Positions 1-12,989 of a stretch of 64,000 bases of DNA are shown one piece after another. The notes under the pieces are model-generated. The model was not told the origin of the DNA and searched no databases. It was given only the letters and a program-made list of their open reading frames with translations. Position 1 is the stretch's first letter. Each line of letters begins with the position of its first letter. The translations under genes were made by a program, and so were the position numbers. The stretch spans positions 1-64,000 of IMG/VR virus record IMGVR_UViG_3300031787_007614, one strand, 5' to 3'.

Positions 1-3
1 TTC

Positions 4-153
4 TATAGTCAAGCACCGAGAGATGCTCAATTTATGCGTCCTCCGCTAAGAGTGCAATAGCCGATAGCAGTTATATTAGGATCCGTTCCCGGCCGGTTGG
101 ACCCGAATAGCGTAAGCGTCCTTACACGATACCTTTATCGGTGCTTGACTATA
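4..153 (-). ncRNA. Unassigned structured RNA (A) closed by a 16-bp stem
   Basis: TATAGTCAAGCACCGA (4-19) is the perfect inverted repeat of 138-153. Internal hairpins (GTAAG/CTTAC, GGGTCC/GGATCC) and G-U pairs mostly favour the minus strand. No ORF; lies in the tRNA operon. Confidence 0.6.
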
Positions 154-183
154 AAAACTAAAAGTTCGGATTTGAAAATCAAA

Positions 184-325
184 TCCTCCCACTGCTAACT
201 ACTGCTTCCCAATTTATCGTCCATCGGCACCCGTGGTAGGGCTTGCGATGCTCATCGGCCCTGAGTTCTGGCTCAGGTGATCCTTGGGATAGGACTGCTG
301 GGCCTTGTCCTGCCCAGCATCAGGA
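184..325 (-). ncRNA. Unassigned structured RNA (B) with H-type pseudoknot
   Basis: Minus strand TGCTGGGC/GCCCAGCA stem whose loop AGGAC can pair with the following GTCCT; further hairpins CCTGAG/CTCAGG and CGATG/CATCG; GC-rich. Confidence 0.55.
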
Positions 326-331
326 AAATTA

Positions 332-530
332 GTTGCTCTGCATCCCCCGGCGGTAATTGTAGTGCATCATCTCTTGGGTTGCCCCGCAATTCTCACACAC
401 CTTCCACCCGCTTCCCGACAGGGACCGCTATCGTGTTGCTAACGGCCTTTCGGTAAGAAGACTACCACCCTTGAGAGTCACCTCACTTCTTATCCTGCGG
501 GTCACAGTATCCGCTAACCAAGCGGAACGT
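332..530 (-). ncRNA. Unassigned structured RNA (C), about 200 nt
   Basis: Minus-strand stems CCGCT/AGCGG, TAAGAAG/CTTCTTA enclosing TGAG/CTCA, and CGGT/ACCG; GC-rich, within the tRNA operon. Confidence 0.5.
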
Positions 531-535
531 CGGGG

Positions 536-595
536 AGAAGCCACGGTTGCAGGACCTAGTGCTCTTGCGAGGAAGTGTCCAGGCGATGTGGCTTC
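536..595 (-). ncRNA. Small bulged hairpin RNA (D)
   Basis: GAAGCCAC/GTGGCTTC outer stem, GCCTGG/CTAGGT middle stem, CTC-GCAA-GAG GNRA tetraloop. Confidence 0.45.
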
Positions 596-600
596 AAACT

Positions 601-693: not shown

Positions 694-700
694 ATAAACT

Positions 701-791
701 TGGTGGACAACAATGGGAATCTAACCCACTTCTTCCTCGTATGCTATTACGAAGTTTCATACCAGCCTCAGGTAATTGACACATCATGTCC
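701..791 (-). ncRNA. Non-canonical tRNA-like RNA 2
   Basis: GGACA.../...TGTCC acceptor ending ACCA, T-arm GTGGG-TTAGATT-CCCAT, hairpin CTTCGTA/TACGAGG, no canonical D or anticodon arm. Confidence 0.6.
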
Positions 792-879: not shown

Positions 880-1075
880 GGATAAGCTACTGGGTTCCAC
901 GCCAGCCCTTAATTGAGCAGTTACTCTGTCCATCTCATTTATTCAAAGTCTGTGTGCAGTGAGATTCTGCCTATCAGAGTCTGTAAGGGTAGTCTCCATC
1001 CTTACGCTTACGGTCTTCTGCCACCGGATCTCTATCGCTAATCAAACGCTACTTTAACGAAAGTAGTAACGGGAT
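880..1075 (-). ncRNA. Unassigned multi-hairpin RNA (G), about 195 nt
   Basis: Between tRNA-Glu and tRNA-Asp; stems CTACTTT/AAAGTAG, CGGT/ACCG, GTAAGG/CCTTAC, AGACTCTG/CAGAATCT, CTGG/CCAG; no ORF. Confidence 0.55.
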
Positions 1076-1076
1076 T

Positions 1077-1151
1077 TGGTAGAGCGTAGGGGAATCGAAC
1101 CCCTCTTACAGGCGTGAAAGGCTTGTGTCCTAACCGATAGACGAACGCTCC
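1077..1151 (-). tRNA. tRNA-Glu(TTC)
   Basis: Cloverleaf, anticodon loop CT-TTC-AC, T-loop TTCGATT, CCA end. Confidence 0.93.
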
Positions 1152-1157
1152 ATAGTT

Positions 1158-1392
1158 CACTATATGAAAACACATTAGGGAAGTTCTTGACACGCATCAC
1201 CAACTTGCATCAAGACCTCATTACAGGCCCAGTAGTTCCGCCGCCTTCCTGGAGTTTGGTGTAGCCTTATCCCTCACGCTCGATGGTGTCTCGCGCTACT
1301 CTTAGGCCCTCCTGCTTCATGGGTATCCGGCTCGAATCAGCCTTTGTTCACCCCTAACGGACTAGGTAACCCTAATGTGTTTACATATAGTG
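1158..1392 (-). ncRNA. Unassigned structured RNA (H) closed by a 23-bp stem
   Basis: 1158-1180 and 1370-1392 are inverted repeats with one mismatch; GC-rich interior with TCTTGA/TCAAGA and GTAGC/GCTAC stems. Confidence 0.6.
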
Positions 1393-1486
1393 CCCAGAAC
1401 TTAATCTGGGGCACTATACAAAATTAAATTTTTAACGAACTTCAAAGTAGTTTCGATCAACTGCCTTTGTTTTCTAACTAGTCTCT

Positions 1487-1515
1487 AGTATAGCATCTCC
1501 TGCTTTACTGGTCAA
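1487..1515 (-). promoter_or_regulatory. sigma70 promoter, RNA operon (proximal)
   Basis: TTGACC-17-TATACT with extended TG. Confidence 0.75.
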
Positions 1516-1584: not shown

Positions 1585-1613
1585 AGTATAGCACCAATCC
1601 AATTATTGGTCTA
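1585..1613 (-). promoter_or_regulatory. sigma70 promoter, RNA operon (distal)
   Basis: TAGACC-17-TATACT with extended TG; downstream sequence duplicated relative to the proximal promoter. Confidence 0.7.
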
Positions 1614-1669: not shown

Positions 1670-2560
1670 TTAGAACTGTACGACCAACCCGCCTGCTACT
1701 TGTTTGACATCAGTGGCTGCTGAGGTTCCCTCAACTGTACGATACAAAACTTGTGCATAGGTCTTTTTGCTGAAAGCATACTCAGCACCTACGTTGTAAC
1801 TCTTGATGCCATTTTCAATGCGACCATAGCTGGCCTTCACTGTGACTGGTCCACCAAGTTTGTGTGCCACGCCGACCAACTGAGCACGGTTGGTGTTGGC
1901 AGCAACGCCTTTGTTGTCGCTTGCGCTGGCAAACACAGTGGTTGCACCAAATTTAGCACGAGCAGCCAACACGTCACTGGTTTCTGCGCCAGCTTCGTAA
2001 CGAGCATAAGTCAACACAGCAGGTCCAACTGCGGCAATCACGGATGCGGCATAAGGATCAGCGGCAGTGCCAACAGCACCAGTGCTACGATCAAAGTTAG
2101 CAGAGACATTGCCAAAGTTCACAGAAGTGAAAGCGGCATTGCTCAAACGCAAACCACGCAGGTTATGCACGTCGGCAGCTGAGCTACCAATCAATGTGCC
2201 AAATGGATCATTGTCGCTGATGGCCAAGAAGTGAGTGTGAACATTGCGACCAAGATCAACGCTACCCATTTTGTGAGCAATACCCACGGTGCTTTGGCGA
2301 TCGCCAAGTCTAGTGTCAGTACCAGTGTCTGGGCTGTTGGCTTGGATGCCGGTCTCGTATGTGGCACGAGCTGTTAATCCGCCACCTAAGTTTTCAGTAG
2401 CACGAATGCCAAAGTGACTCAAGTCATTGGCCATGCCTTGCACGGTGGAAGCACCAGTTTTGGTGTTGTCAAGGTAAGTGCCAACACGACCATAGATACC
2501 AACTTGTGCGCTTGCAACACCAGCAACTGCCAGGGTCAACGCAATTAGAACTTTCTTCAT
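1670..2560 (-). CDS. Gram-negative general porin (Betaproteobacteria-type)
   Basis: Signal peptide, N-terminal V.IYGRV, S.FGIR..E.LGGGL, Y.FSKKT, C-terminal Phe. Confidence 0.9.
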   Translation of the reverse strand: MKKVLIALTLAVAGVASAQVGIYGRVGTYLDNTKTGASTVQGMANDLSHFGIRATENLGGGLTARATYETGIQANSPDTGTDTRLGDRQSTVGIAHKMGSVDLGRNVHTHFLAISDNDPFGTLIGSSAADVHNLRGLRLSNAAFTSVNFGNVSANFDRSTGAVGTAADPYAASVIAAVGPAVLTYARYEAGAETSDVLAARAKFGATTVFASASDNKGVAANTNRAQLVGVAHKLGGPVTVKASYGRIENGIKSYNVGAEYAFSKKTYAQVLYRTVEGTSAATDVKQVAGGLVVQF

Positions 2561-2638: not shown

Positions 2639-2640
2639 AG

Positions 2641-2666
2641 AAAATGGCTACTTTCGCAGCCATTTT
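2641..2666 (-). terminator. Terminator after tmRNA
   Basis: AAAATGGCT-GCGAAAGT-AGCCATTTT. Confidence 0.75.
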
Positions 2667-2826
2667 GGTGGTTTCTGTTACGAGGTATTTCCTACCCTAG
2701 ACGACCTTAAGCGGCCATCAAGAATTTTTCATCATTTGCAGATAAAAGTTTTGCTTGATTTACGGTCATCGCCTACCGTGCTGTCCACTCTGTTACTCTT
2801 TGCCCTGTCGAATCTAGGTCAGGCCC
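2666..2826 (-). ncRNA. ssrA: tmRNA, two-piece: piece with 5' acceptor strand and tag ORF ANDEKFLMAA* (2707-2739)
   Basis: Starts GGGCCTGA-CCTAGATTCGAC; tag reading frame ends in AA-stop. Confidence 0.92.
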
Positions 2827-2839
2827 ATCATAAAGAAAC

Positions 2840-2917
2840 TTAATCTACGCTTAATGTTGTTAACAACAAGCATAATATTGGAAAAACAATTAATAAAAAT
2901 TTTGCTAAATTTTCCAT
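2840..2917 (-). CDS. 25-aa hydrophobic micropeptide in tmRNA intervening segment
   Basis: MENLAKFLLIVFPILCLLLTTLSVD*; start is 1 nt after the upstream micro-ORF stop. Confidence 0.45.
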   Translation of the reverse strand: MENLAKFLLIVFPILCLLLTTLSVD

Positions 2918-2918
2918 A

Positions 2919-3029
2919 TTACCATAACTCACAGTTTTTTATTTTCTCTTCGTCCAATGTGGTATCACGTGTAAAATAAAATACACCAAACACTAACCAA
3001 AATAACAAAAATAAAACATAACCTATCAT
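2919..3029 (-). CDS. 36-aa single-TM micropeptide in tmRNA intervening segment
   Basis: MIGYVLFLLFWLVFGVFYFTRDTTLDEEKIKNCELW*; RBS AAGGAAG just upstream. Confidence 0.55.
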   Translation of the reverse strand: MIGYVLFLLFWLVFGVFYFTRDTTLDEEKIKNCELW

Positions 3030-3041
3030 TAAACTTCCTTA

Positions 3042-3108
3042 TGGTGGACCTGGGGGGATTCGCACCCCCGTCCAGAACACTTTTCTCTCGGCTTCATACA
3101 GCAATAAC
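3042..3108 (-). ncRNA. ssrA: tmRNA, two-piece: piece with T-arm and ACCA end (transcribed first)
   Basis: GGAC-GGGGG-TGCGAAT-CCCCC-CAGGTCC-ACCA; pairs with GGGCCTG giving the G3-U70 Ala identity. Confidence 0.92.
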
Positions 3109-3112
3109 TCGC

Positions 3113-3141
3113 AGTATATATTTATTCTTTGGGCTTGTCAA
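3113..3141 (-). promoter_or_regulatory. sigma70 promoter of tmRNA
   Basis: TTGACA-17-TATACT. Confidence 0.8.
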
Positions 3142-3283
3142 CTGCTTTGGAGATGATGTCATACACTTGTGCGTATGCATCAGTAATTTTGTCTAGTTGT
3201 TGTTCCGACACCAAGTCTGTGTCCTCCAGACTGACCAAGTCTCGGGCTAGATTTTCTTGTAGTTTTTTTATGGGATTGAGCAC
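3122..3283 (-). CDS. Hypothetical protein, 53 aa (GTG start)
   Basis: Manual translation VLNPIKKLQENLARDL...; ATAAATA motif upstream. Confidence 0.5.
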   Translation of the reverse strand: MLNPIKKLQENLARDLVSLEDTDLVSEQQLDKITDAYAQVYDIISKAVDKPKE

Positions 3284-4548: not shown

Positions 4549-5313
4549 TCAACGGTCTTTGTCAGTTCTTACCAATTGAATTAAGCGGTATCCAGGATCA
4601 AATTCCCACCATTTTTTGCCAAACTGTGGATCTGCGGCAGCGGCGTGATGATTGTTGTGCCAGCCCTCTCCACCAGTCAAATATCCTACCAGCAGGTTAT
4701 TTGAACTTTGATCACGTGTGTCAAAATTTCTATATCCTGATGGACTGTGAGTGAGAGAGTTGGTCAGTGAACTGGCATGTTGCAACAATAGTGACGGAAC
4801 CAAATAAGCATACACTACTGCATAAGGATCTATCATGTAAACTGCCACCCCGACCAAGATAGTGTACAACCAATGATTGTAGTACATGTGCATGTGAAAT
4901 TTGGATTTCACAATCTCTGGAGCATAACTTAATTTTGGAGTAGCAGGTGTGAGTCTAAATTGCACGGCTAGATAACCGTATACCGCAGGTGAGTGCGGAT
5001 CATCTTTTGTGTCAGAGTGTCTATGATGCGCTCGATGTATTGCTACCCAATACAACATTGGTAAAGTTGTGCCAGGAATAGCAATCAATGTTCCTAGATA
5101 TTCAAACCATTTTGGTGCTTGAAAAGAACGATGGGTGATCAGCCGATGAACTGTTACAGTTCCGACTACCATCTTGATATAGTAGACCAACAGACATATT
5201 GCCCACTGCCATGCTTCACTGTTGAAGATAAAGTAGACCAGGATCACATGTAGACAGGCACTGTATGCAATCATTTCGTTGTGCGAAGGCACAAACCAGT
5301 TTTTCTTTTTCAT
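4549..5313 (-). CDS. Membrane fatty-acid (delta-9-type) desaturase
   Basis: Three His boxes HRLITH, HRAHH, WHNNHH; TM segments; WWEFD. Confidence 0.92.
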   Translation of the reverse strand: MKKKNWFVPSHNEMIAYSACLHVILVYFIFNSEAWQWAICLLVYYIKMVVGTVTVHRLITHRSFQAPKWFEYLGTLIAIPGTTLPMLYWVAIHRAHHRHSDTKDDPHSPAVYGYLAVQFRLTPATPKLSYAPEIVKSKFHMHMYYNHWLYTILVGVAVYMIDPYAVVYAYLVPSLLLQHASSLTNSLTHSPSGYRNFDTRDQSSNNLLVGYLTGGEGWHNNHHAAAADPQFGKKWWEFDPGYRLIQLVRTDKDR

Positions 5314-5480: not shown

Positions 5481-5773
5481 AGCCTGGAATCATAAGTGAA
5501 GGCAGCAAGATATCGCATGCTGGCACGGCTGGGAATGTGCTGATTACAGAACCGTTGGTATGCCGCACGCCAACGCTTTTGGACAGGTGCTGGCGCATGG
5601 CAAGCAAGATAATGCAAGTGGCCAAATCTGCGCCCAATGCTGATGTGATTGGGCTTCCAGCCTGCAGGATACCATTTGTCGCGAGTTTGCCAATTGTAGT
5701 TTACCCAGACACCCATTCGGCGTTCTTGCATGATATACTTTTTAGATATATCTTGTGGTCTAAATCGGTTCAT
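5477..5773 (-). CDS. Hypothetical protein
   Basis: ATGA overlaps with neighbours. Confidence 0.6.
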   Translation of the reverse strand: MNRFRPQDISKKYIMQERRMGVWVNYNWQTRDKWYPAGWKPNHISIGRRFGHLHYLACHAPAPVQKRWRAAYQRFCNQHIPSRASMRYLAAFTYDSRL

Positions 5774-6564
5774 TTTTGCATCATCAGCGCATTGAAGTTT
5801 GCAGGAACAACAATTGTTTGCACACGACCGTTCTTGATACCTTCTGAGATATTCATCATAGCCTGCGCTTGCATGTAAGCAATTGACTGAGCACCTTGAT
5901 TACTCAATGCTTGCATACGTTCTGCTTCCATCTTAGCAGTCTTAACTTCAACTTCTTTTTGTTTCAATTCATTCTTGGCACGAACCAACTCATTTGCACT
6001 CGCAACCACAGAATCTGCAGGTACAATATTCCGAATCAACACTTGACCAACAACCAAACTACCATCAAGTTTTTCATCAGCCAAACTCTTTTGAATTTGT
6101 TCTTTAATTGCTTGTTCCATCACTTGGCGATTATCAGCCATGTCTAGTGCCTCGTACTTTCGGGCTTCTTTGTAGATGGCATTACGAGTGGTTTGAACCA
6201 TATAGTTGTACATCAAGTAGATGTCGCCGTTGTGCCGAGCATGGAATGCTTGACTCTTTTGGCTATACAACTCGGCTACCTGTGCTTGATTGATGTTATA
6301 GATAACCACTGCATCAAAGTCTTTCATTGTTGAGTTATCTTTAGCAACAGGTGTCATGTCCTCCAGTTTGACATTAACGTCCTTGATTGGGAATGTAAGA
6401 ACATCACCCCAAAAGGTTTGATTAAACGAGCCAGGCATTAATTCACCTTGCTGGACTTGTTTATCAAAGCCAACACGTACACCAACTTCACCTGTTTCGA
6501 TACGAGTACAACCTGTTGCCAGCACAGCCGCGGCAAGAACGGAGAGAGTCAAAATACGTTTCAT
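5770..6564 (-). CDS. SPFH/band-7 (prohibitin-like) lipoprotein
   Basis: Lipobox LATGC, IETGEVGV, C-terminal coiled coil. Confidence 0.88.
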   Translation of the reverse strand: MKRILTLSVLAAAVLATGCTRIETGEVGVRVGFDKQVQQGELMPGSFNQTFWGDVLTFPIKDVNVKLEDMTPVAKDNSTMKDFDAVVIYNINQAQVAELYSQKSQAFHARHNGDIYLMYNYMVQTTRNAIYKEARKYEALDMADNRQVMEQAIKEQIQKSLADEKLDGSLVVGQVLIRNIVPADSVVASANELVRAKNELKQKEVEVKTAKMEAERMQALSNQGAQSIAYMQAQAMMNISEGIKNGRVQTIVVPANFNALMMQK

Positions 6565-11447: not shown

Positions 11448-12989
11448 ATGTGTGGTGTTCTATACGTAAAAAGCACCACTGATATACCGCTAGAAAAGCA
11501 CAACCAAGCTCTAGAAATTTTAAAAGATCGCGGTCCAGATTTTACCTGTTACCAACATCATGGTCGTGTGTTCTGTGCGCAAACAGTTCTGCACATCACT
11601 GGCAACACACAATTTTACAATCGACAGTCAGATGATTTTTTTGCATTCAATGGCGAAATCTACAACTATCGCTGGTTTGGTTCCTACAGCAACGACACTG
11701 AGCTGATGTATCGTGCTGTAAAAGACGCACCAGTAAAAAAACTCAAATACTTTGAAGGACCGTGGGCGTGGGTGTATGCTCAAGGCGACCAAGTGATATA
11801 TGCCACTGATCCACAAGGCGAAAGATGCCTGTACAGATATCAAGACAACAACATACTGATTGTGAGTTCTGAGGTGGCAGCTATTTTGGTATACATCCGA
11901 CCAAAATTACAAGACATTGATTACACAACCAAACACTATCCAATTTGGCAAAACACGCCTTGGCAAGGAATTGAACGATGTGTGCCAGGTGTGATGTATG
12001 ATCAGTCGGGCAACACCACAGTGATTGACAGTATCTTTTCATGGGCCAAACCCAGTAGTATTCAAACATTGGACCAGGCCTGGGAAGAATATCAACCCTT
12101 GTGGGAACGGGTAATCACTGACATGCGGCCAGAAACATCTTATGCCTGCACATTCAGTGGTGGGCTTGATTCTGGCGTGGTTGCAAAAAGTCTTCCACAA
12201 AGTCAGCACTATTATACCACCAACATGCTGGGCAAAGACCCAGTGAGTGAACAATCTCAACGTATGTTGGAAGGCAGTCAACGAGACAAAATCATCAACA
12301 TTGGTGTTACAGAACAGCAATGGGCCGATGCATTTGAGCAAGTGTGTCGTCGCACACTGATGCCAGTTCAAAGCTACAGTTTTGTTGGCCAGTGGATAAT
12401 TGCTCAACACTGCAAAGAACGTGTGTTGTTTACTGGTGTAGGCGCTGATGAACTGTTTGGTGGCTATGGCGTTTACTCACAGCTTGAATACACCACACAA
12501 ACAAGTGCAAGTCCTTACAGTTCATTTGGCAATGACACTCACGCTCAACAACTGTGGCAACAATGTTTGCATGCACATCAAGGTCAAGCAGAGCCAGCCA
12601 CTCTGTTGATGGATTATATCACTCAAATTTGTGCAATAGACATGCGTGGCATTGACGTTTGTACCATGGCACATGGCATTGAACCACGCTCGCCATTTGT
12701 GCATCCTAAGATCATTCGGTTTGCACTTGGCCTTCCCATGCACCTGAGGCGCGGCAAACCTTTGATTCGTCGACAGTTTTTGGCCTCCTGGCCTGAAGAA
12801 ATGATACTTCCCAAAAAAGGATTCACTGGACATTGCAATGATTCATTGCCTTGGATGAAATTCACTGTGCCAGATCAGGCTCGGGCACCACAGTGGAAGC
12901 AAATTGTCAAAACTGGATTTAGATATTATGCCAATCAATATCTTGATCAAACCACTCAGGACTTATCCGCACATGCGGATGTTGCTTGA
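11448..12989 (+). CDS. asnB: Asparagine synthetase-like glutamine amidotransferase
   Basis: MCG N-terminus, RGPD, NGEIYN, SGGLDS, G.GADELFGGY, E.RSPF. Confidence 0.9.
   Translation: MCGVLYVKSTTDIPLEKHNQALEILKDRGPDFTCYQHHGRVFCAQTVLHITGNTQFYNRQSDDFFAFNGEIYNYRWFGSYSNDTELMYRAVKDAPVKKLKYFEGPWAWVYAQGDQVIYATDPQGERCLYRYQDNNILIVSSEVAAILVYIRPKLQDIDYTTKHYPIWQNTPWQGIERCVPGVMYDQSGNTTVIDSIFSWAKPSSIQTLDQAWEEYQPLWERVITDMRPETSYACTFSGGLDSGVVAKSLPQSQHYYTTNMLGKDPVSEQSQRMLEGSQRDKIINIGVTEQQWADAFEQVCRRTLMPVQSYSFVGQWIIAQHCKERVLFTGVGADELFGGYGVYSQLEYTTQTSASPYSSFGNDTHAQQLWQQCLHAHQGQAEPATLLMDYITQICAIDMRGIDVCTMAHGIEPRSPFVHPKIIRFALGLPMHLRRGKPLIRRQFLASWPEEMILPKKGFTGHCNDSLPWMKFTVPDQARAPQWKQIVKTGFRYYANQYLDQTTQDLSAHADVA

What the first reader, a model, noticed from the sequence alone, without database searches (positions are those of the whole stretch)
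1158..1418. RNA H: 23-bp closing stem with a competing upstream hairpin
Seen: the 235-nt unit is closed by a 23-bp stem with one mismatch. Its 5' CACTATA can alternatively pair in the hairpin TATAGTGCCCCAGA/TCTGGGCACTATA (1386-1418). The design parallels RNA A. Inference: rRNA-like processing stem or folding switch at the head of the operon.
Basis: partly seen in the sequence, partly recalled or inferred. Interest (0 to 1): 0.6.

Follow-up and report, generated by a model that had tools for sequence, protein, structure and literature searches.

The report
Bracketed structured RNA heading phage tRNA operon
The stem and its competing hairpin are real and conserved: they bracket a previously undescribed, roughly 190-nt structured RNA that sits just after the promoter of tRNA operons in a group of large freshwater phages, and they most likely guide its folding and its excision from the transcript.

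Summary
Observation confirmed. On the minus strand, which is the transcribed one, 1392-1370 pairs with 1180-1158 (23 bp, one U-U mismatch). The hairpin 1418-1386 shares CACUAUA (1392-1386) with that stem.

The window is the start of a 364-kb phage record. RNA H lies about 90 nt after two tandem sigma-70-type promoters and 6 nt before tRNA-Glu, at the head of a tRNA array.

The interior is a new RNA family with no Rfam 15 match. I found 41 distinct homologs in viral contigs. The structure has 43 pairs, 91% of cells are paired, and 35 pairs show compensatory changes.

In 32 of 39 distinct homologs a helix abuts the core. It stays paired for about 22 bp although its sequence differs greatly between clades.

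Wherever a transcribed leader precedes the helix, an upstream hairpin overlaps its outer 5-9 nt. The three strands change together between clades. In folding predictions the hairpin forms first and the long helix then wins or ties.

The same stem type also brackets other cargo RNAs, or nothing at all, and one clade keeps the core without it.

Best reading: a modular bracket for processing and folding insulation, probably cut by host RNase III, with a transient guard hairpin. Cleavage is not shown, and the function of the core is unknown.

The parts
1585..1613 (-). Upstream promoter-like site P1 (TAGACC-17-TATACT, with TG before the -10 box)
   Evidence: It is one copy of a 98-nt tandem duplication of the promoter module (D1 and D3).
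1487..1515 (-). Promoter-like site P2 (TTGACC-17-TATACT), about 90 nt upstream of the long stem
   Evidence: The same promoter type is aligned in the homologs.
1419..1482 (-). Transcribed A/U-rich leader between the inferred start site and the hairpin
   Evidence: Sequence. No long-range partner was found for it in 4 kb downstream.
1386..1418 (-). Upstream guard hairpin hp1. Its lower stem UAUAGUG/CACUAUA competes with the long stem, and its G+C-rich top persists.
1370..1392 (-). 5' arm of the 23-bp closing helix
   Evidence: (I1).
1177..1372 (-). Core of RNA H: a conserved structured RNA with two three-way junctions and invariant junction motifs (GGUUACC, CCGUUAG, AUGAA, GCGGCGGA, GUAAUGA)
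   Evidence: Covariance-model match of 90.8 bits. Covariation. No Rfam match.
1158..1180 (-). 3' arm of the closing helix
   Evidence: (I1).
1077..1151 (-). tRNA-Glu (UUC), starting 6 nt after the helix. RNase P cleavage here would define the 3' side of the unit.

Best explanation
RNA H is the first gene of a phage tRNA/ncRNA operon and is transcribed from the minus strand. Its roughly 190-nt core belongs to a previously undescribed family of structured RNAs. These are found just downstream of strong sigma-70-type promoters in tRNA arrays, and sometimes early operons, of a group of aquatic and mostly large phages. The 22-23-bp A/U-rich helix that closes it is a modular bracket rather than part of the functional core. 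It joins sequences made about 190 nt apart, insulates the core fold from its neighbours, and presents two turns of dsRNA. Host RNase III most likely cuts that helix. This would release the core on a short stem and leave a single-stranded leader on pre-tRNA-Glu for RNase P. The upstream hairpin is a co-transcriptional guard: it forms first and holds the outer 7-9 nt of the 5' arm until the 3' arm is made. The inner helix then nucleates and displaces it by branch migration, while the G+C-rich hairpin top remains stacked on the end of the helix.

Shown: the structures, their conservation and covariation, the order of formation in folding predictions, and the position in the operon. Inferred: RNase III cleavage, the guard role of the hairpin, and every statement about what the core does.
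For: Context. The window is bases 1-64000 of a 364,404-bp virus record with terminal repeats, and it carries a T4-type DNA polymerase. The genome has 31 tRNAs on the minus strand.

Core family. An nhmmer profile and a covariance model find 41 distinct homologs. The structure has 43 pairs, 91.2% of cells are paired against 36-53% when the partners are slid by 1-3 columns, 35 pairs show changes on both sides, and 0 of 500 shuffles reach the observed values. There is no Rfam 15 match in the window or in eight divergent homologs.

Helix. Of 39 distinct homologs, 32 have a helix of 19 bp or more abutting GG of GGUUACC. In the anchored pair profile, positions 1-22 are 73-100% paired (16 of the 22 at 88% or more), position 23 is 65% paired, and positions from 24 outward are about 50%. 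Each position shows 1-5 standard pair types (two or more from position 3 outward). Pairing is 92.6% in register against 40-55% slid.

Module. The same stem type brackets a bare 11-nt loop and cargoes of 57, 80 and 107 nt in related contigs. A second unit in this operon, RNA A, has its own 23-bp closing stem. One clade keeps the core with only about 4 bp of closure.

Guard hairpin. In 21 of 21 hairpin-bearing homologs the transcript prefix folds the hairpin over the outer part of the 5' arm. In the complete mini-constructs the outer 7 nt pair downstream with probability 0.55-1.0. Strands 1 and 3 are 5-9 of 9 identical in the hairpin-bearing homologs, and they change together with strand 2 between clades. 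For the window itself the two states differ by 2.6 kcal/mol.

Expression. In one metatranscriptome a 139-nt contig of depth 68 is identical to 1231-1352. In the same run, depth over 1369-1700 is 0-3.
Against: No cleavage site or RNA end was observed. Only assembled contigs of RNA libraries were available, and these cannot show ends and may contain DNA. The phage encodes no RNase III, and the host is unidentified. In one clade (L143, L172, L188, L115) the helix begins at about the predicted transcription start. There the 5' end needs no processing, which fits an uncleaved terminal helix equally well. The hairpin covers only 5-9 of the 22 nt of the 5' arm, so its protective value is limited. The overlap is individually significant against shuffles in only 11 of 31 sequences, and a chimera test was uninformative. 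The helix may end at 22 bp simply because the hairpin top and the tRNA start there.
Confidence: 0.55

Rival explanations
1. The long helix is an uncleaved terminal helix. It ties the 5' and 3' ends of a stable RNA together, as in 6S, SRP and Y RNAs or P1 of RNase P RNA, and protects them from exonucleases and 5'-end-dependent decay. The ends would be made by transcription initiation or single-strand cuts upstream, and by RNase P at the following tRNA.
For: In the L143/L172/L188/L115 clade the helix starts about 7-10 nt after the -10 box, that is, at the predicted first transcribed base. The 3' arm ends 0-7 nt before a tRNA in many homologs. The phage has no RNase III gene.
Against: The same stem type brackets unrelated cargo and even an empty loop, and one clade keeps the core without it. 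This looks more like a generic processing or insulation module than the family's own P1. Stability alone does not explain a length held at about 22 bp, nor the upstream hairpin.
Confidence: 0.25
2. It is a true two-state switch. The hairpin and the outer helix are alternative end states, and their balance, set by a ligand, a protein or temperature, controls something downstream. One example would be how much of the 3' arm is free as a single-stranded leader for RNase P at tRNA-Glu.
For: In the window the two states differ by only 2.6 kcal/mol, and the probability of the hairpin state reaches 0.2-0.4 in several homologs. The three-strand covariation shows that both pairings are under selection. 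The invariant junction nucleotides of the core resemble those of ligand-binding RNAs.
Against: There is no terminator-like U tract, no RBS and no ORF after the element on the minus strand. A 22-bp P1 is far more stable than riboswitch P1 helices, which by general knowledge are typically 4-8 bp. In most homologs the long helix wins outright, with probability 0.9-1.0. The competitor lies 5' of the core, not in a 3' expression platform.
Confidence: 0.08
3. It is a DNA-level feature: a small mobile element with terminal inverted repeats, a recombination cassette boundary like the promoter-stem-loop modules of T4-type phages, or a promoter or operator palindrome.
For: The interior is present, absent or replaced between the same arms in related phages (for the joint 1179 to 1374, 65). 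Strands 1 and 3 form a short direct repeat.
Against: There is a single copy per genome. No target-site duplication lies directly outside the arms. The arms covary rather than keep their sequence, and they use G-U pairs that exist only in minus-strand RNA. The core has strong RNA covariation. The promoter scan finds no site at the TATAGT motifs.
Confidence: 0.04

Closest known systems
RNase III processing stems of bacterial rRNA operons and phage T7 early transcripts
   Same: A long helix, here about 22 bp, forms between sequences that flank a stable RNA in an untranslated polycistronic transcript that also carries tRNAs. It lies at the head of the operon just after strong promoters. Its pairing is conserved more than its sequence.
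   Different: Cleavage is not demonstrated. The enclosed RNA is about 190 nt, not an rRNA. An upstream hairpin shares one strand with the helix. The same stem is reused around different small cargoes.
Stable RNAs of the phage T4 tRNA gene cluster (species 1 and 2, rnaD/rnaC). From my own knowledge, species 1 is an in vitro RNase III substrate.
   Same: They are small stable non-tRNA RNAs of unknown function, encoded and co-transcribed within a phage tRNA cluster of a T4-type phage.
   Different: blastn against 50,697 phage records, a collection I expect to include T4-type phages, found no similarity for the H region. The size and architecture differ.
GOLLD and ROOL RNAs (large ornate phage RNAs near tRNA islands; PMC12286853)
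   Same: They are phage-encoded structured RNAs of unknown function next to tRNA genes. A GOLLD RNA lies in this same array, about 2.7 kb downstream of RNA H.
   Different: RNA H is about 190 nt against 600-800 nt or more. It has no match to either Rfam model and a different architecture.
Non-native 5' hairpin of E. coli SRP RNA, rearranged during transcription (bioRxiv 10.1101/379222)
   Same: A local 5' hairpin forms first. It is then displaced when the distant 3' partner is transcribed and a long terminal helix forms.
   Different: This is predicted here from thermodynamic folding of prefixes, not measured. Here the competitor lies outside the mature helix, and its top survives.

Membership tests
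RNase III processing stem | A double helix of about two turns (20 bp or more) formed by sequences flanking the mature RNA | tested here: met
   23 bp with one mismatch. About 22 bp across 26 distinct arm pairs.
RNase III processing stem | Pairing maintained in evolution by compensatory change | tested here: met
   One to five standard pair types per position (two or more from position 3 outward). 92.6% paired in register against 40-55% slid.
RNase III processing stem | Staggered double-strand cleavage by RNase III | not testable with these tools
   Only contigs of RNA libraries were available, so no ends could be read.
RNase III processing stem | An RNase III is available | tested here: inconclusive
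   None is encoded by the phage (PF14622). The host is unidentified; by general knowledge RNase III is near-universal in bacteria.
Riboswitch or regulatory RNA switch | Conserved mutually exclusive pairings | tested here: met
Riboswitch or regulatory RNA switch | An expression platform (terminator or RBS sequestration) coupled to the switch | tested here: not met
   No terminator-like site on the minus strand in 1-1480. The next gene is a tRNA.
Any Rfam 15 family (GOLLD, ROOL, 6S, SRP, RNase P, Y RNA, tmRNA, group I intron, self-cleaving ribozymes and the rest) | A match to the family covariance model | tested here: not met
   No family covers the core, either at E up to 10 in the window or at the gathering score in eight divergent homolog loci. 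The only overlap is a chance-level snR33 match at 1368-1462 on the plus strand (17 bits, E = 9.6), at the edge of the unit.
T4 tRNA-cluster stable RNAs | Encoded inside a phage tRNA cluster | tested here: met
T4 tRNA-cluster stable RNAs | Sequence or structure homology to rnaC/rnaD | tested here: not met
   No blastn match for the H region in the phage collection. The structures were not compared.
MITE-like inverted-repeat element | Multiple copies, terminal repeats conserved in sequence, and a flanking target duplication | tested here: not met
   Single copy. The arms covary. There is no duplication outside the arms.
Co-transcriptional guard hairpin (SRP-RNA-like rearrangement) | A local hairpin forms before the long-range partner exists and is less stable than the final helix | tested here: met
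   Prefix folds compared with complete folds in 21 homologs. This is a prediction only.
Co-transcriptional guard hairpin (SRP-RNA-like rearrangement) | The rearrangement is observed experimentally | not testable with these tools
   It needs co-transcriptional structure probing.

The most novel reading that the evidence does not exclude
The H core is a new functional RNA class, either a catalytic RNA or an RNA that acts on the transcribing polymerase in cis, as the put and EAR antitermination RNAs do. Phages would place it as the first transcribed element of long untranslated tRNA/ncRNA operons and early operons. The 22-bp stem plus guard hairpin would be a portable 'RNA expression cassette' that these phages reuse and exchange to deliver different structured RNAs.
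Probability: 0.12. Interest if true: 0.85.

Novelty: new variant of a known kind. Interest (0 to 1): 0.6.

Why it matters
Phage tRNA arrays are known to carry enigmatic RNAs such as the T4 species 1 and 2 RNAs, GOLLD and ROOL. This adds a well-supported new family to that list: 41 distinct members, about 45 invariant nucleotides concentrated in junctions, and strong covariation. It always lies immediately after a strong promoter. The work also shows a reusable bracket of a long stem plus a competing hairpin that delivers several different RNAs. The family is compact enough for biochemistry. Its three-strand covariation gives a natural and testable case of designed co-transcriptional strand exchange. 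If RNase III cleavage is confirmed, it would show how these phages mature mixed tRNA/ncRNA operons using host enzymes.

Tried and rejected
- **Rfam:** scans at the gathering score and at E up to 10 found nothing on H.
- **Synteny through the neighbouring porin gene:** the 87-88% identical porins lie in contigs without the array.
- **blastn against cultured phages:** three different H variants gave no homolog.
- **Scan of 185,579 prokaryote genomes with a three-motif pattern:** one true hit, on a 183-kb contig that looks like a phage binned into a MAG, and one chance hit.
- **Phage-encoded RNase III and Ro60/TROVE:** absent.
- **Long-range partner for the leader, as a giant operon-wide stem:** no better than shuffled leaders.
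- **Chimera test for hairpin covariation:** uninformative, because the outer arms are all A/U-rich and similar.
- **Coding potential of the conserved AUGAAG:** the frames and stops are not conserved, and the helices covary, so this was rejected by inspection.
- **Promoter reading of the TATAGT motifs and terminator reading of the hairpin:** neither is supported.
- **MAFFT Q-INS-i:** not installed. I used a covariance model instead.
- **The count of structure pairs on the flanks:** I did not pass a long dot-bracket string for the flanks. The stem statistics come from an anchored script instead.

Full report
**1. What the window is**

The window is bases 1-64000 of a 364,404-bp IMG/VR virus record with 127-bp terminal repeats, estimated complete. 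It carries a T4-type family B DNA polymerase. The genome has 31 tRNA genes on the minus strand. The array starts near window position 1600, runs down through position 1 and continues at the other end of the record, at about 355.7-364.3 kb. A two-piece tmRNA of the betaproteobacterial type lies nearby. The finding therefore concerns the minus strand of a phage tRNA/ncRNA operon.

**2. The observation**

The repeat finder reports arms 1158-1180 and 1370-1392: 23 nt, 96% complementary, 189 nt apart (I1).

- On the minus strand the 5' arm is CACUAUAUGUAAACACAUUAGGG (1392-1370).
- The 3' arm is CCCUAAUGUGUUUUCAUAUAGUG (1180-1158).
- The single mismatch is U-U.
- The hairpin at 1418-1386 (UAUAGUGCCCCAGA, a 6-nt loop, then UCUGGGCACUAUA) uses 1392-1386 as the end of its 3' arm.

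The MFE fold of 1425-1152 contains the whole long stem plus the G+C-rich top of the hairpin: -92.5 kcal/mol, z = -3.0. The stem motif is unique in the genome.

**3. Position in the operon**

- Two sigma-70-type promoter-like sites lie upstream on the minus strand: 1613-1585 and 1515-1487. They are part of a 98-nt tandem duplication (D1 and D3).
- The bidirectional terminator of the neighbouring porin gene is at 1622-1650.
- tRNA-Glu begins at 1151, 6 nt after the stem.

RNA H is therefore the first structured element of the transcript.

**4. Homologs**

Synteny through the porin gene gave only identical copies, or contigs without the array. Relatives found through the DNA polymerase were searched whole.

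- One relative (G001) has the interior upstream of tRNA-Glu but only a vestigial closing stem.
- Another (G002) has both hairpins in the same place but no interior. Its long stem closes on a 3-nt loop, and no core was found in its 72-kb fragment.

Motifs shared by the window and G001 were used for two scans of viral contigs. A profile search and a covariance model then gave 41 distinct homologs. A few more are visible through their stems. All lie in viral contigs, mostly in tRNA arrays.

None was found in cultured phages by blastn. A scan of one genome per prokaryote species gave a single true hit, on a 183-kb contig that looks like a phage binned into a MAG.

**5. The core is a real structured RNA family that appears to be undescribed**

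On the 41-sequence alignment the 43-pair structure has 91.2% of cells paired. With the 3' partners slid by 1-3 columns the figure is 36-53%. Changes on both sides are seen in 35 pairs, and 0 of 500 shuffles reach the observed scores.

The architecture has these parts:

- a closing helix;
- an interrupted helix P2;
- a three-way junction carrying two variable hairpins;
- a further hairpin before the 3' strand of the closing helix.

Nearly invariant unpaired or junction segments are GGUUACC, CCGUUAG, AUGAA, GCGGCGGA, GUAAUGA and UUCC. No Rfam 15 family covers it, either in the window at E up to 10 or at the gathering score in eight divergent homolog loci. The only overlap is a chance-level snR33 match at the plus-strand edge of the unit (17 bits, E = 9.6). 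Five literature searches found no description of it. The invariant G-U pairs fix the strand as minus.

**6. The closing helix is conserved in form, not in sequence**

Of 39 distinct homologs, 32 have a helix of 19 bp or more that abuts the GG of GGUUACC. Shuffled-arm controls score about 9 against 16-27 observed. The arm sequences differ strongly between clades:

- CACUAUAUGUAAACACAUUAGGG (the window);
- GCUAUAUUAAAAUGUAUUAAAGG;
- UCAUAUGUAAAUAUAUUAUGGG;
- CAGUUAGAAAAGAGCAAAGG;
- CCGCUAUUAGGAAAGAGUUGAAGG.

I anchored the arms at the core and compared 26 distinct arm pairs.

| Positions, counted from the core | Share paired |
|---|---|
| 1-22 | 73-100% (16 of the 22 positions at 88% or more) |
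| 23 | 65% |
| 24 and beyond | about 50% |

Overall 92.6% are paired in register, against 40-55% when slid. Each position shows 1-5 standard pair types (two or more from position 3 outward). There is one exception: one clade (G001 and L104, L106, L109, L110, L112) keeps the core with only about 4 bp of closure, and two further homologs (L170, L190) also lack a long helix.

**7. The stem is a module**

- The same stem type (CUAUAUG.AAACA ... UGUUU.CAUAUAG) brackets a bare loop in G002.
- It brackets a 57-nt cargo right after the H unit in L146 and L161.
- It brackets an 80-nt cargo elsewhere in the array of L106.
- It brackets a 107-nt cargo just before an unbracketed H core in L190.
- A metatranscriptome contig joins 1179 to 1374 with other or no letters between.
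- A different unit of this operon, RNA A (window 158-1 and across the record's ends), has its own 23-bp closing stem. That stem is conserved in G001 and G002.

I saw no overlapping competitor hairpin at A.

**8. The competing hairpin**

Wherever a transcribed leader precedes the helix, an upstream hairpin ends inside the 5' arm and overlaps 5-9 nt of the 22-bp helix. In the clade where the helix begins at about the predicted transcription start (L143, L172, L188, L115) there is no room for one, and none is present.

I call the three strands 1 (hairpin 5' arm), 2 (the shared strand) and 3 (outer 3' arm). Strands 1 and 3 are 5-9 of 9 identical in the hairpin-bearing homologs. All three change together between clades:

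| Clade | Strand 1 | Strand 2 | Strand 3 |
|---|---|---|---|
| Window | UAUAGUG | CACUAUA | UAUAGUG |
| L100 | CAUAUGG | CCAUAUG | CAUAUGG |
| L181 | CAUAUGAA | UUCAUAUG | CAUAUGAA |

L164 and L218 behave similarly. This argues that both pairings are selected.

In 21 of 21 hairpin-bearing homologs, the transcript up to the end of the 5' arm folds the hairpin over the outer arm. The complete mini-construct then folds the full long helix with only the hairpin top left, and the outer 7 nt pair downstream with probability 0.55-1.0. For the full-length window sequence the two states are -89.9 and -92.5 kcal/mol.

There are caveats. The overlap beats shuffles individually in only 11 of 31 sequences, and a chimera test was uninformative.

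**9. Expression**

Four metatranscriptomes from different studies hold parts of the stretch. In run X1 a 139-nt contig of depth 68 is identical to 1231-1352, while depth over 1369-1700 is 0-3. That is what a stable RNA would give and not what contaminating DNA would give. Other units of the operon also reach high depth, namely 343-456, 913-1026 and the tRNAs. These are contigs, so no ends, strand or level can be read, and the tool warns that DNA may be present.

**10. Mechanism**

The best-supported reading is a modular bracket. A helix of about two A/U-rich turns flanks a stable RNA in an untranslated operon, is reused for other cargo and is dispensable for the core. By general knowledge of RNase III substrates in rRNA operons and T7 early RNA, this is what a host RNase III site looks like. 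Cleavage would free the core on a short stem and would leave pre-tRNA-Glu with a single-stranded leader for RNase P.

The hairpin is best read as a transient guard that is displaced by strand exchange. This resembles the rearrangement described for the 5' hairpin of E. coli SRP RNA (bioRxiv 10.1101/379222).

The steps not shown are cleavage, the benefit of the guard, and any function of the core.

- **Main rival:** an uncleaved terminal helix. The clade whose helix starts at the transcription start favours this.
- **A regulated switch** is unlikely, because no read-out element follows and the long helix usually wins.
- **DNA-level explanations** are disfavoured by the single copy, the covariation that includes G-U pairs, and the absence of flanking duplications.
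- **A cis-acting antitermination role** for the core is an attractive speculation given its constant position right after promoters, including one case ahead of small ORFs. The array, however, has several internal promoter-like sites, and no predicted terminators lie between H and the next units. Nothing specific supports this idea.

**11. Comparison with what is known, and novelty**

RNA H works like an rRNA-type processing stem, and it resembles the stable RNAs of the T4 tRNA cluster and the GOLLD and ROOL RNAs in its genomic habit (PMC12286853). A GOLLD RNA lies in this very array. It is not a member of any Rfam family. The combination of a new core family, a reusable 22-bp bracket and a three-strand competing hairpin is a new variant of a known kind. 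I score interest at about 0.6. The structural evidence is strong and the family appears to be undescribed, but the function and the processing are still inferred.

Noticed in passing
G000 362284-362748, minus strand (L234:7785-8249); outside the window: A GOLLD RNA (RF02032, 204 bits against a gathering score of 150) with a nested tRNA lies in the same tRNA array, about 2.7 kb downstream of RNA H. A promoter-like site lies just upstream of it.
   Followed up: partly
window 2639-3155, minus strand: The phage encodes a two-piece (permuted) tmRNA of the betaproteobacterial type with the tag ANDEKFLMAA. The same type occurs in the related contig L164 and in Bordetella phage PHB04, which hints at a betaproteobacterial host.
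   Followed up: partly
window 1-158, continuing across the record's ends: RNA A is a 160-nt unit closed by its own 23-bp stem. It is conserved in G001 and G002, where it sits in a different position relative to the tRNAs, and has no Rfam match. I saw no overlapping competitor hairpin.
   Followed up: partly
window about 157-600, minus strand: A large structured unit of about 440 nt is partly conserved in G001 and G002. It is 80.6% identical over 98 nt to an unannotated gap in Bordetella phage vB_BbrM_PHB04 (47164-47261), next to that phage's tRNAs and tmRNA. It reaches the highest metatranscriptome depth of the stretch (343-456). It has no Rfam match.
   Followed up: partly
window about 604-692 and 700-790, minus strand: Two tRNA-like sequences have acceptor and T arms but long internal inserts. 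ARAGORN does not call them, and Rfam tRNA gives only 20 bits for the first. They may be type II, intron-bearing or degenerate tRNAs.
   Followed up: no
window 880-1076, minus strand: A further unit of about 200 nt lies between tRNA-Glu and tRNA-Asp and reaches depth 96 in one metatranscriptome. Contigs of relatives join 873 to 1076 directly, so it is present in some relatives and absent in others.
   Followed up: partly
L146:13376-13458, L106:2977-3082, L190:146-278: The same stem cassette as in RNA H brackets unrelated small cargo RNAs of 57, 80 and 107 nt in related phage contigs.
   Followed up: partly
window 1459-1495 and 1557-1593 (also 1532-1553 and 1628-1649): A promoter-plus-hairpin module is duplicated in tandem at 98-nt spacing, which gives the operon two promoters.
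   Followed up: no
window 1670-2560, 4549-5313, 5770-6564, 11448-12989: Host-like genes sit in the phage: a Gram-negative porin (Porin_4), a fatty-acid desaturase, an SPFH/Band 7 protein and an asparagine synthase. The porin has 87-88% identical relatives in other viral contigs with a different neighbourhood.
   Followed up: partly
L233 (NZ_JBBAKG010000001.1, 183 kb, labelled as a Haliscomenobacter MAG): This contig carries an H homolog with the same hairpin and stem design as the window. It is probably a phage contig binned into a bacterial MAG.
   Followed up: no
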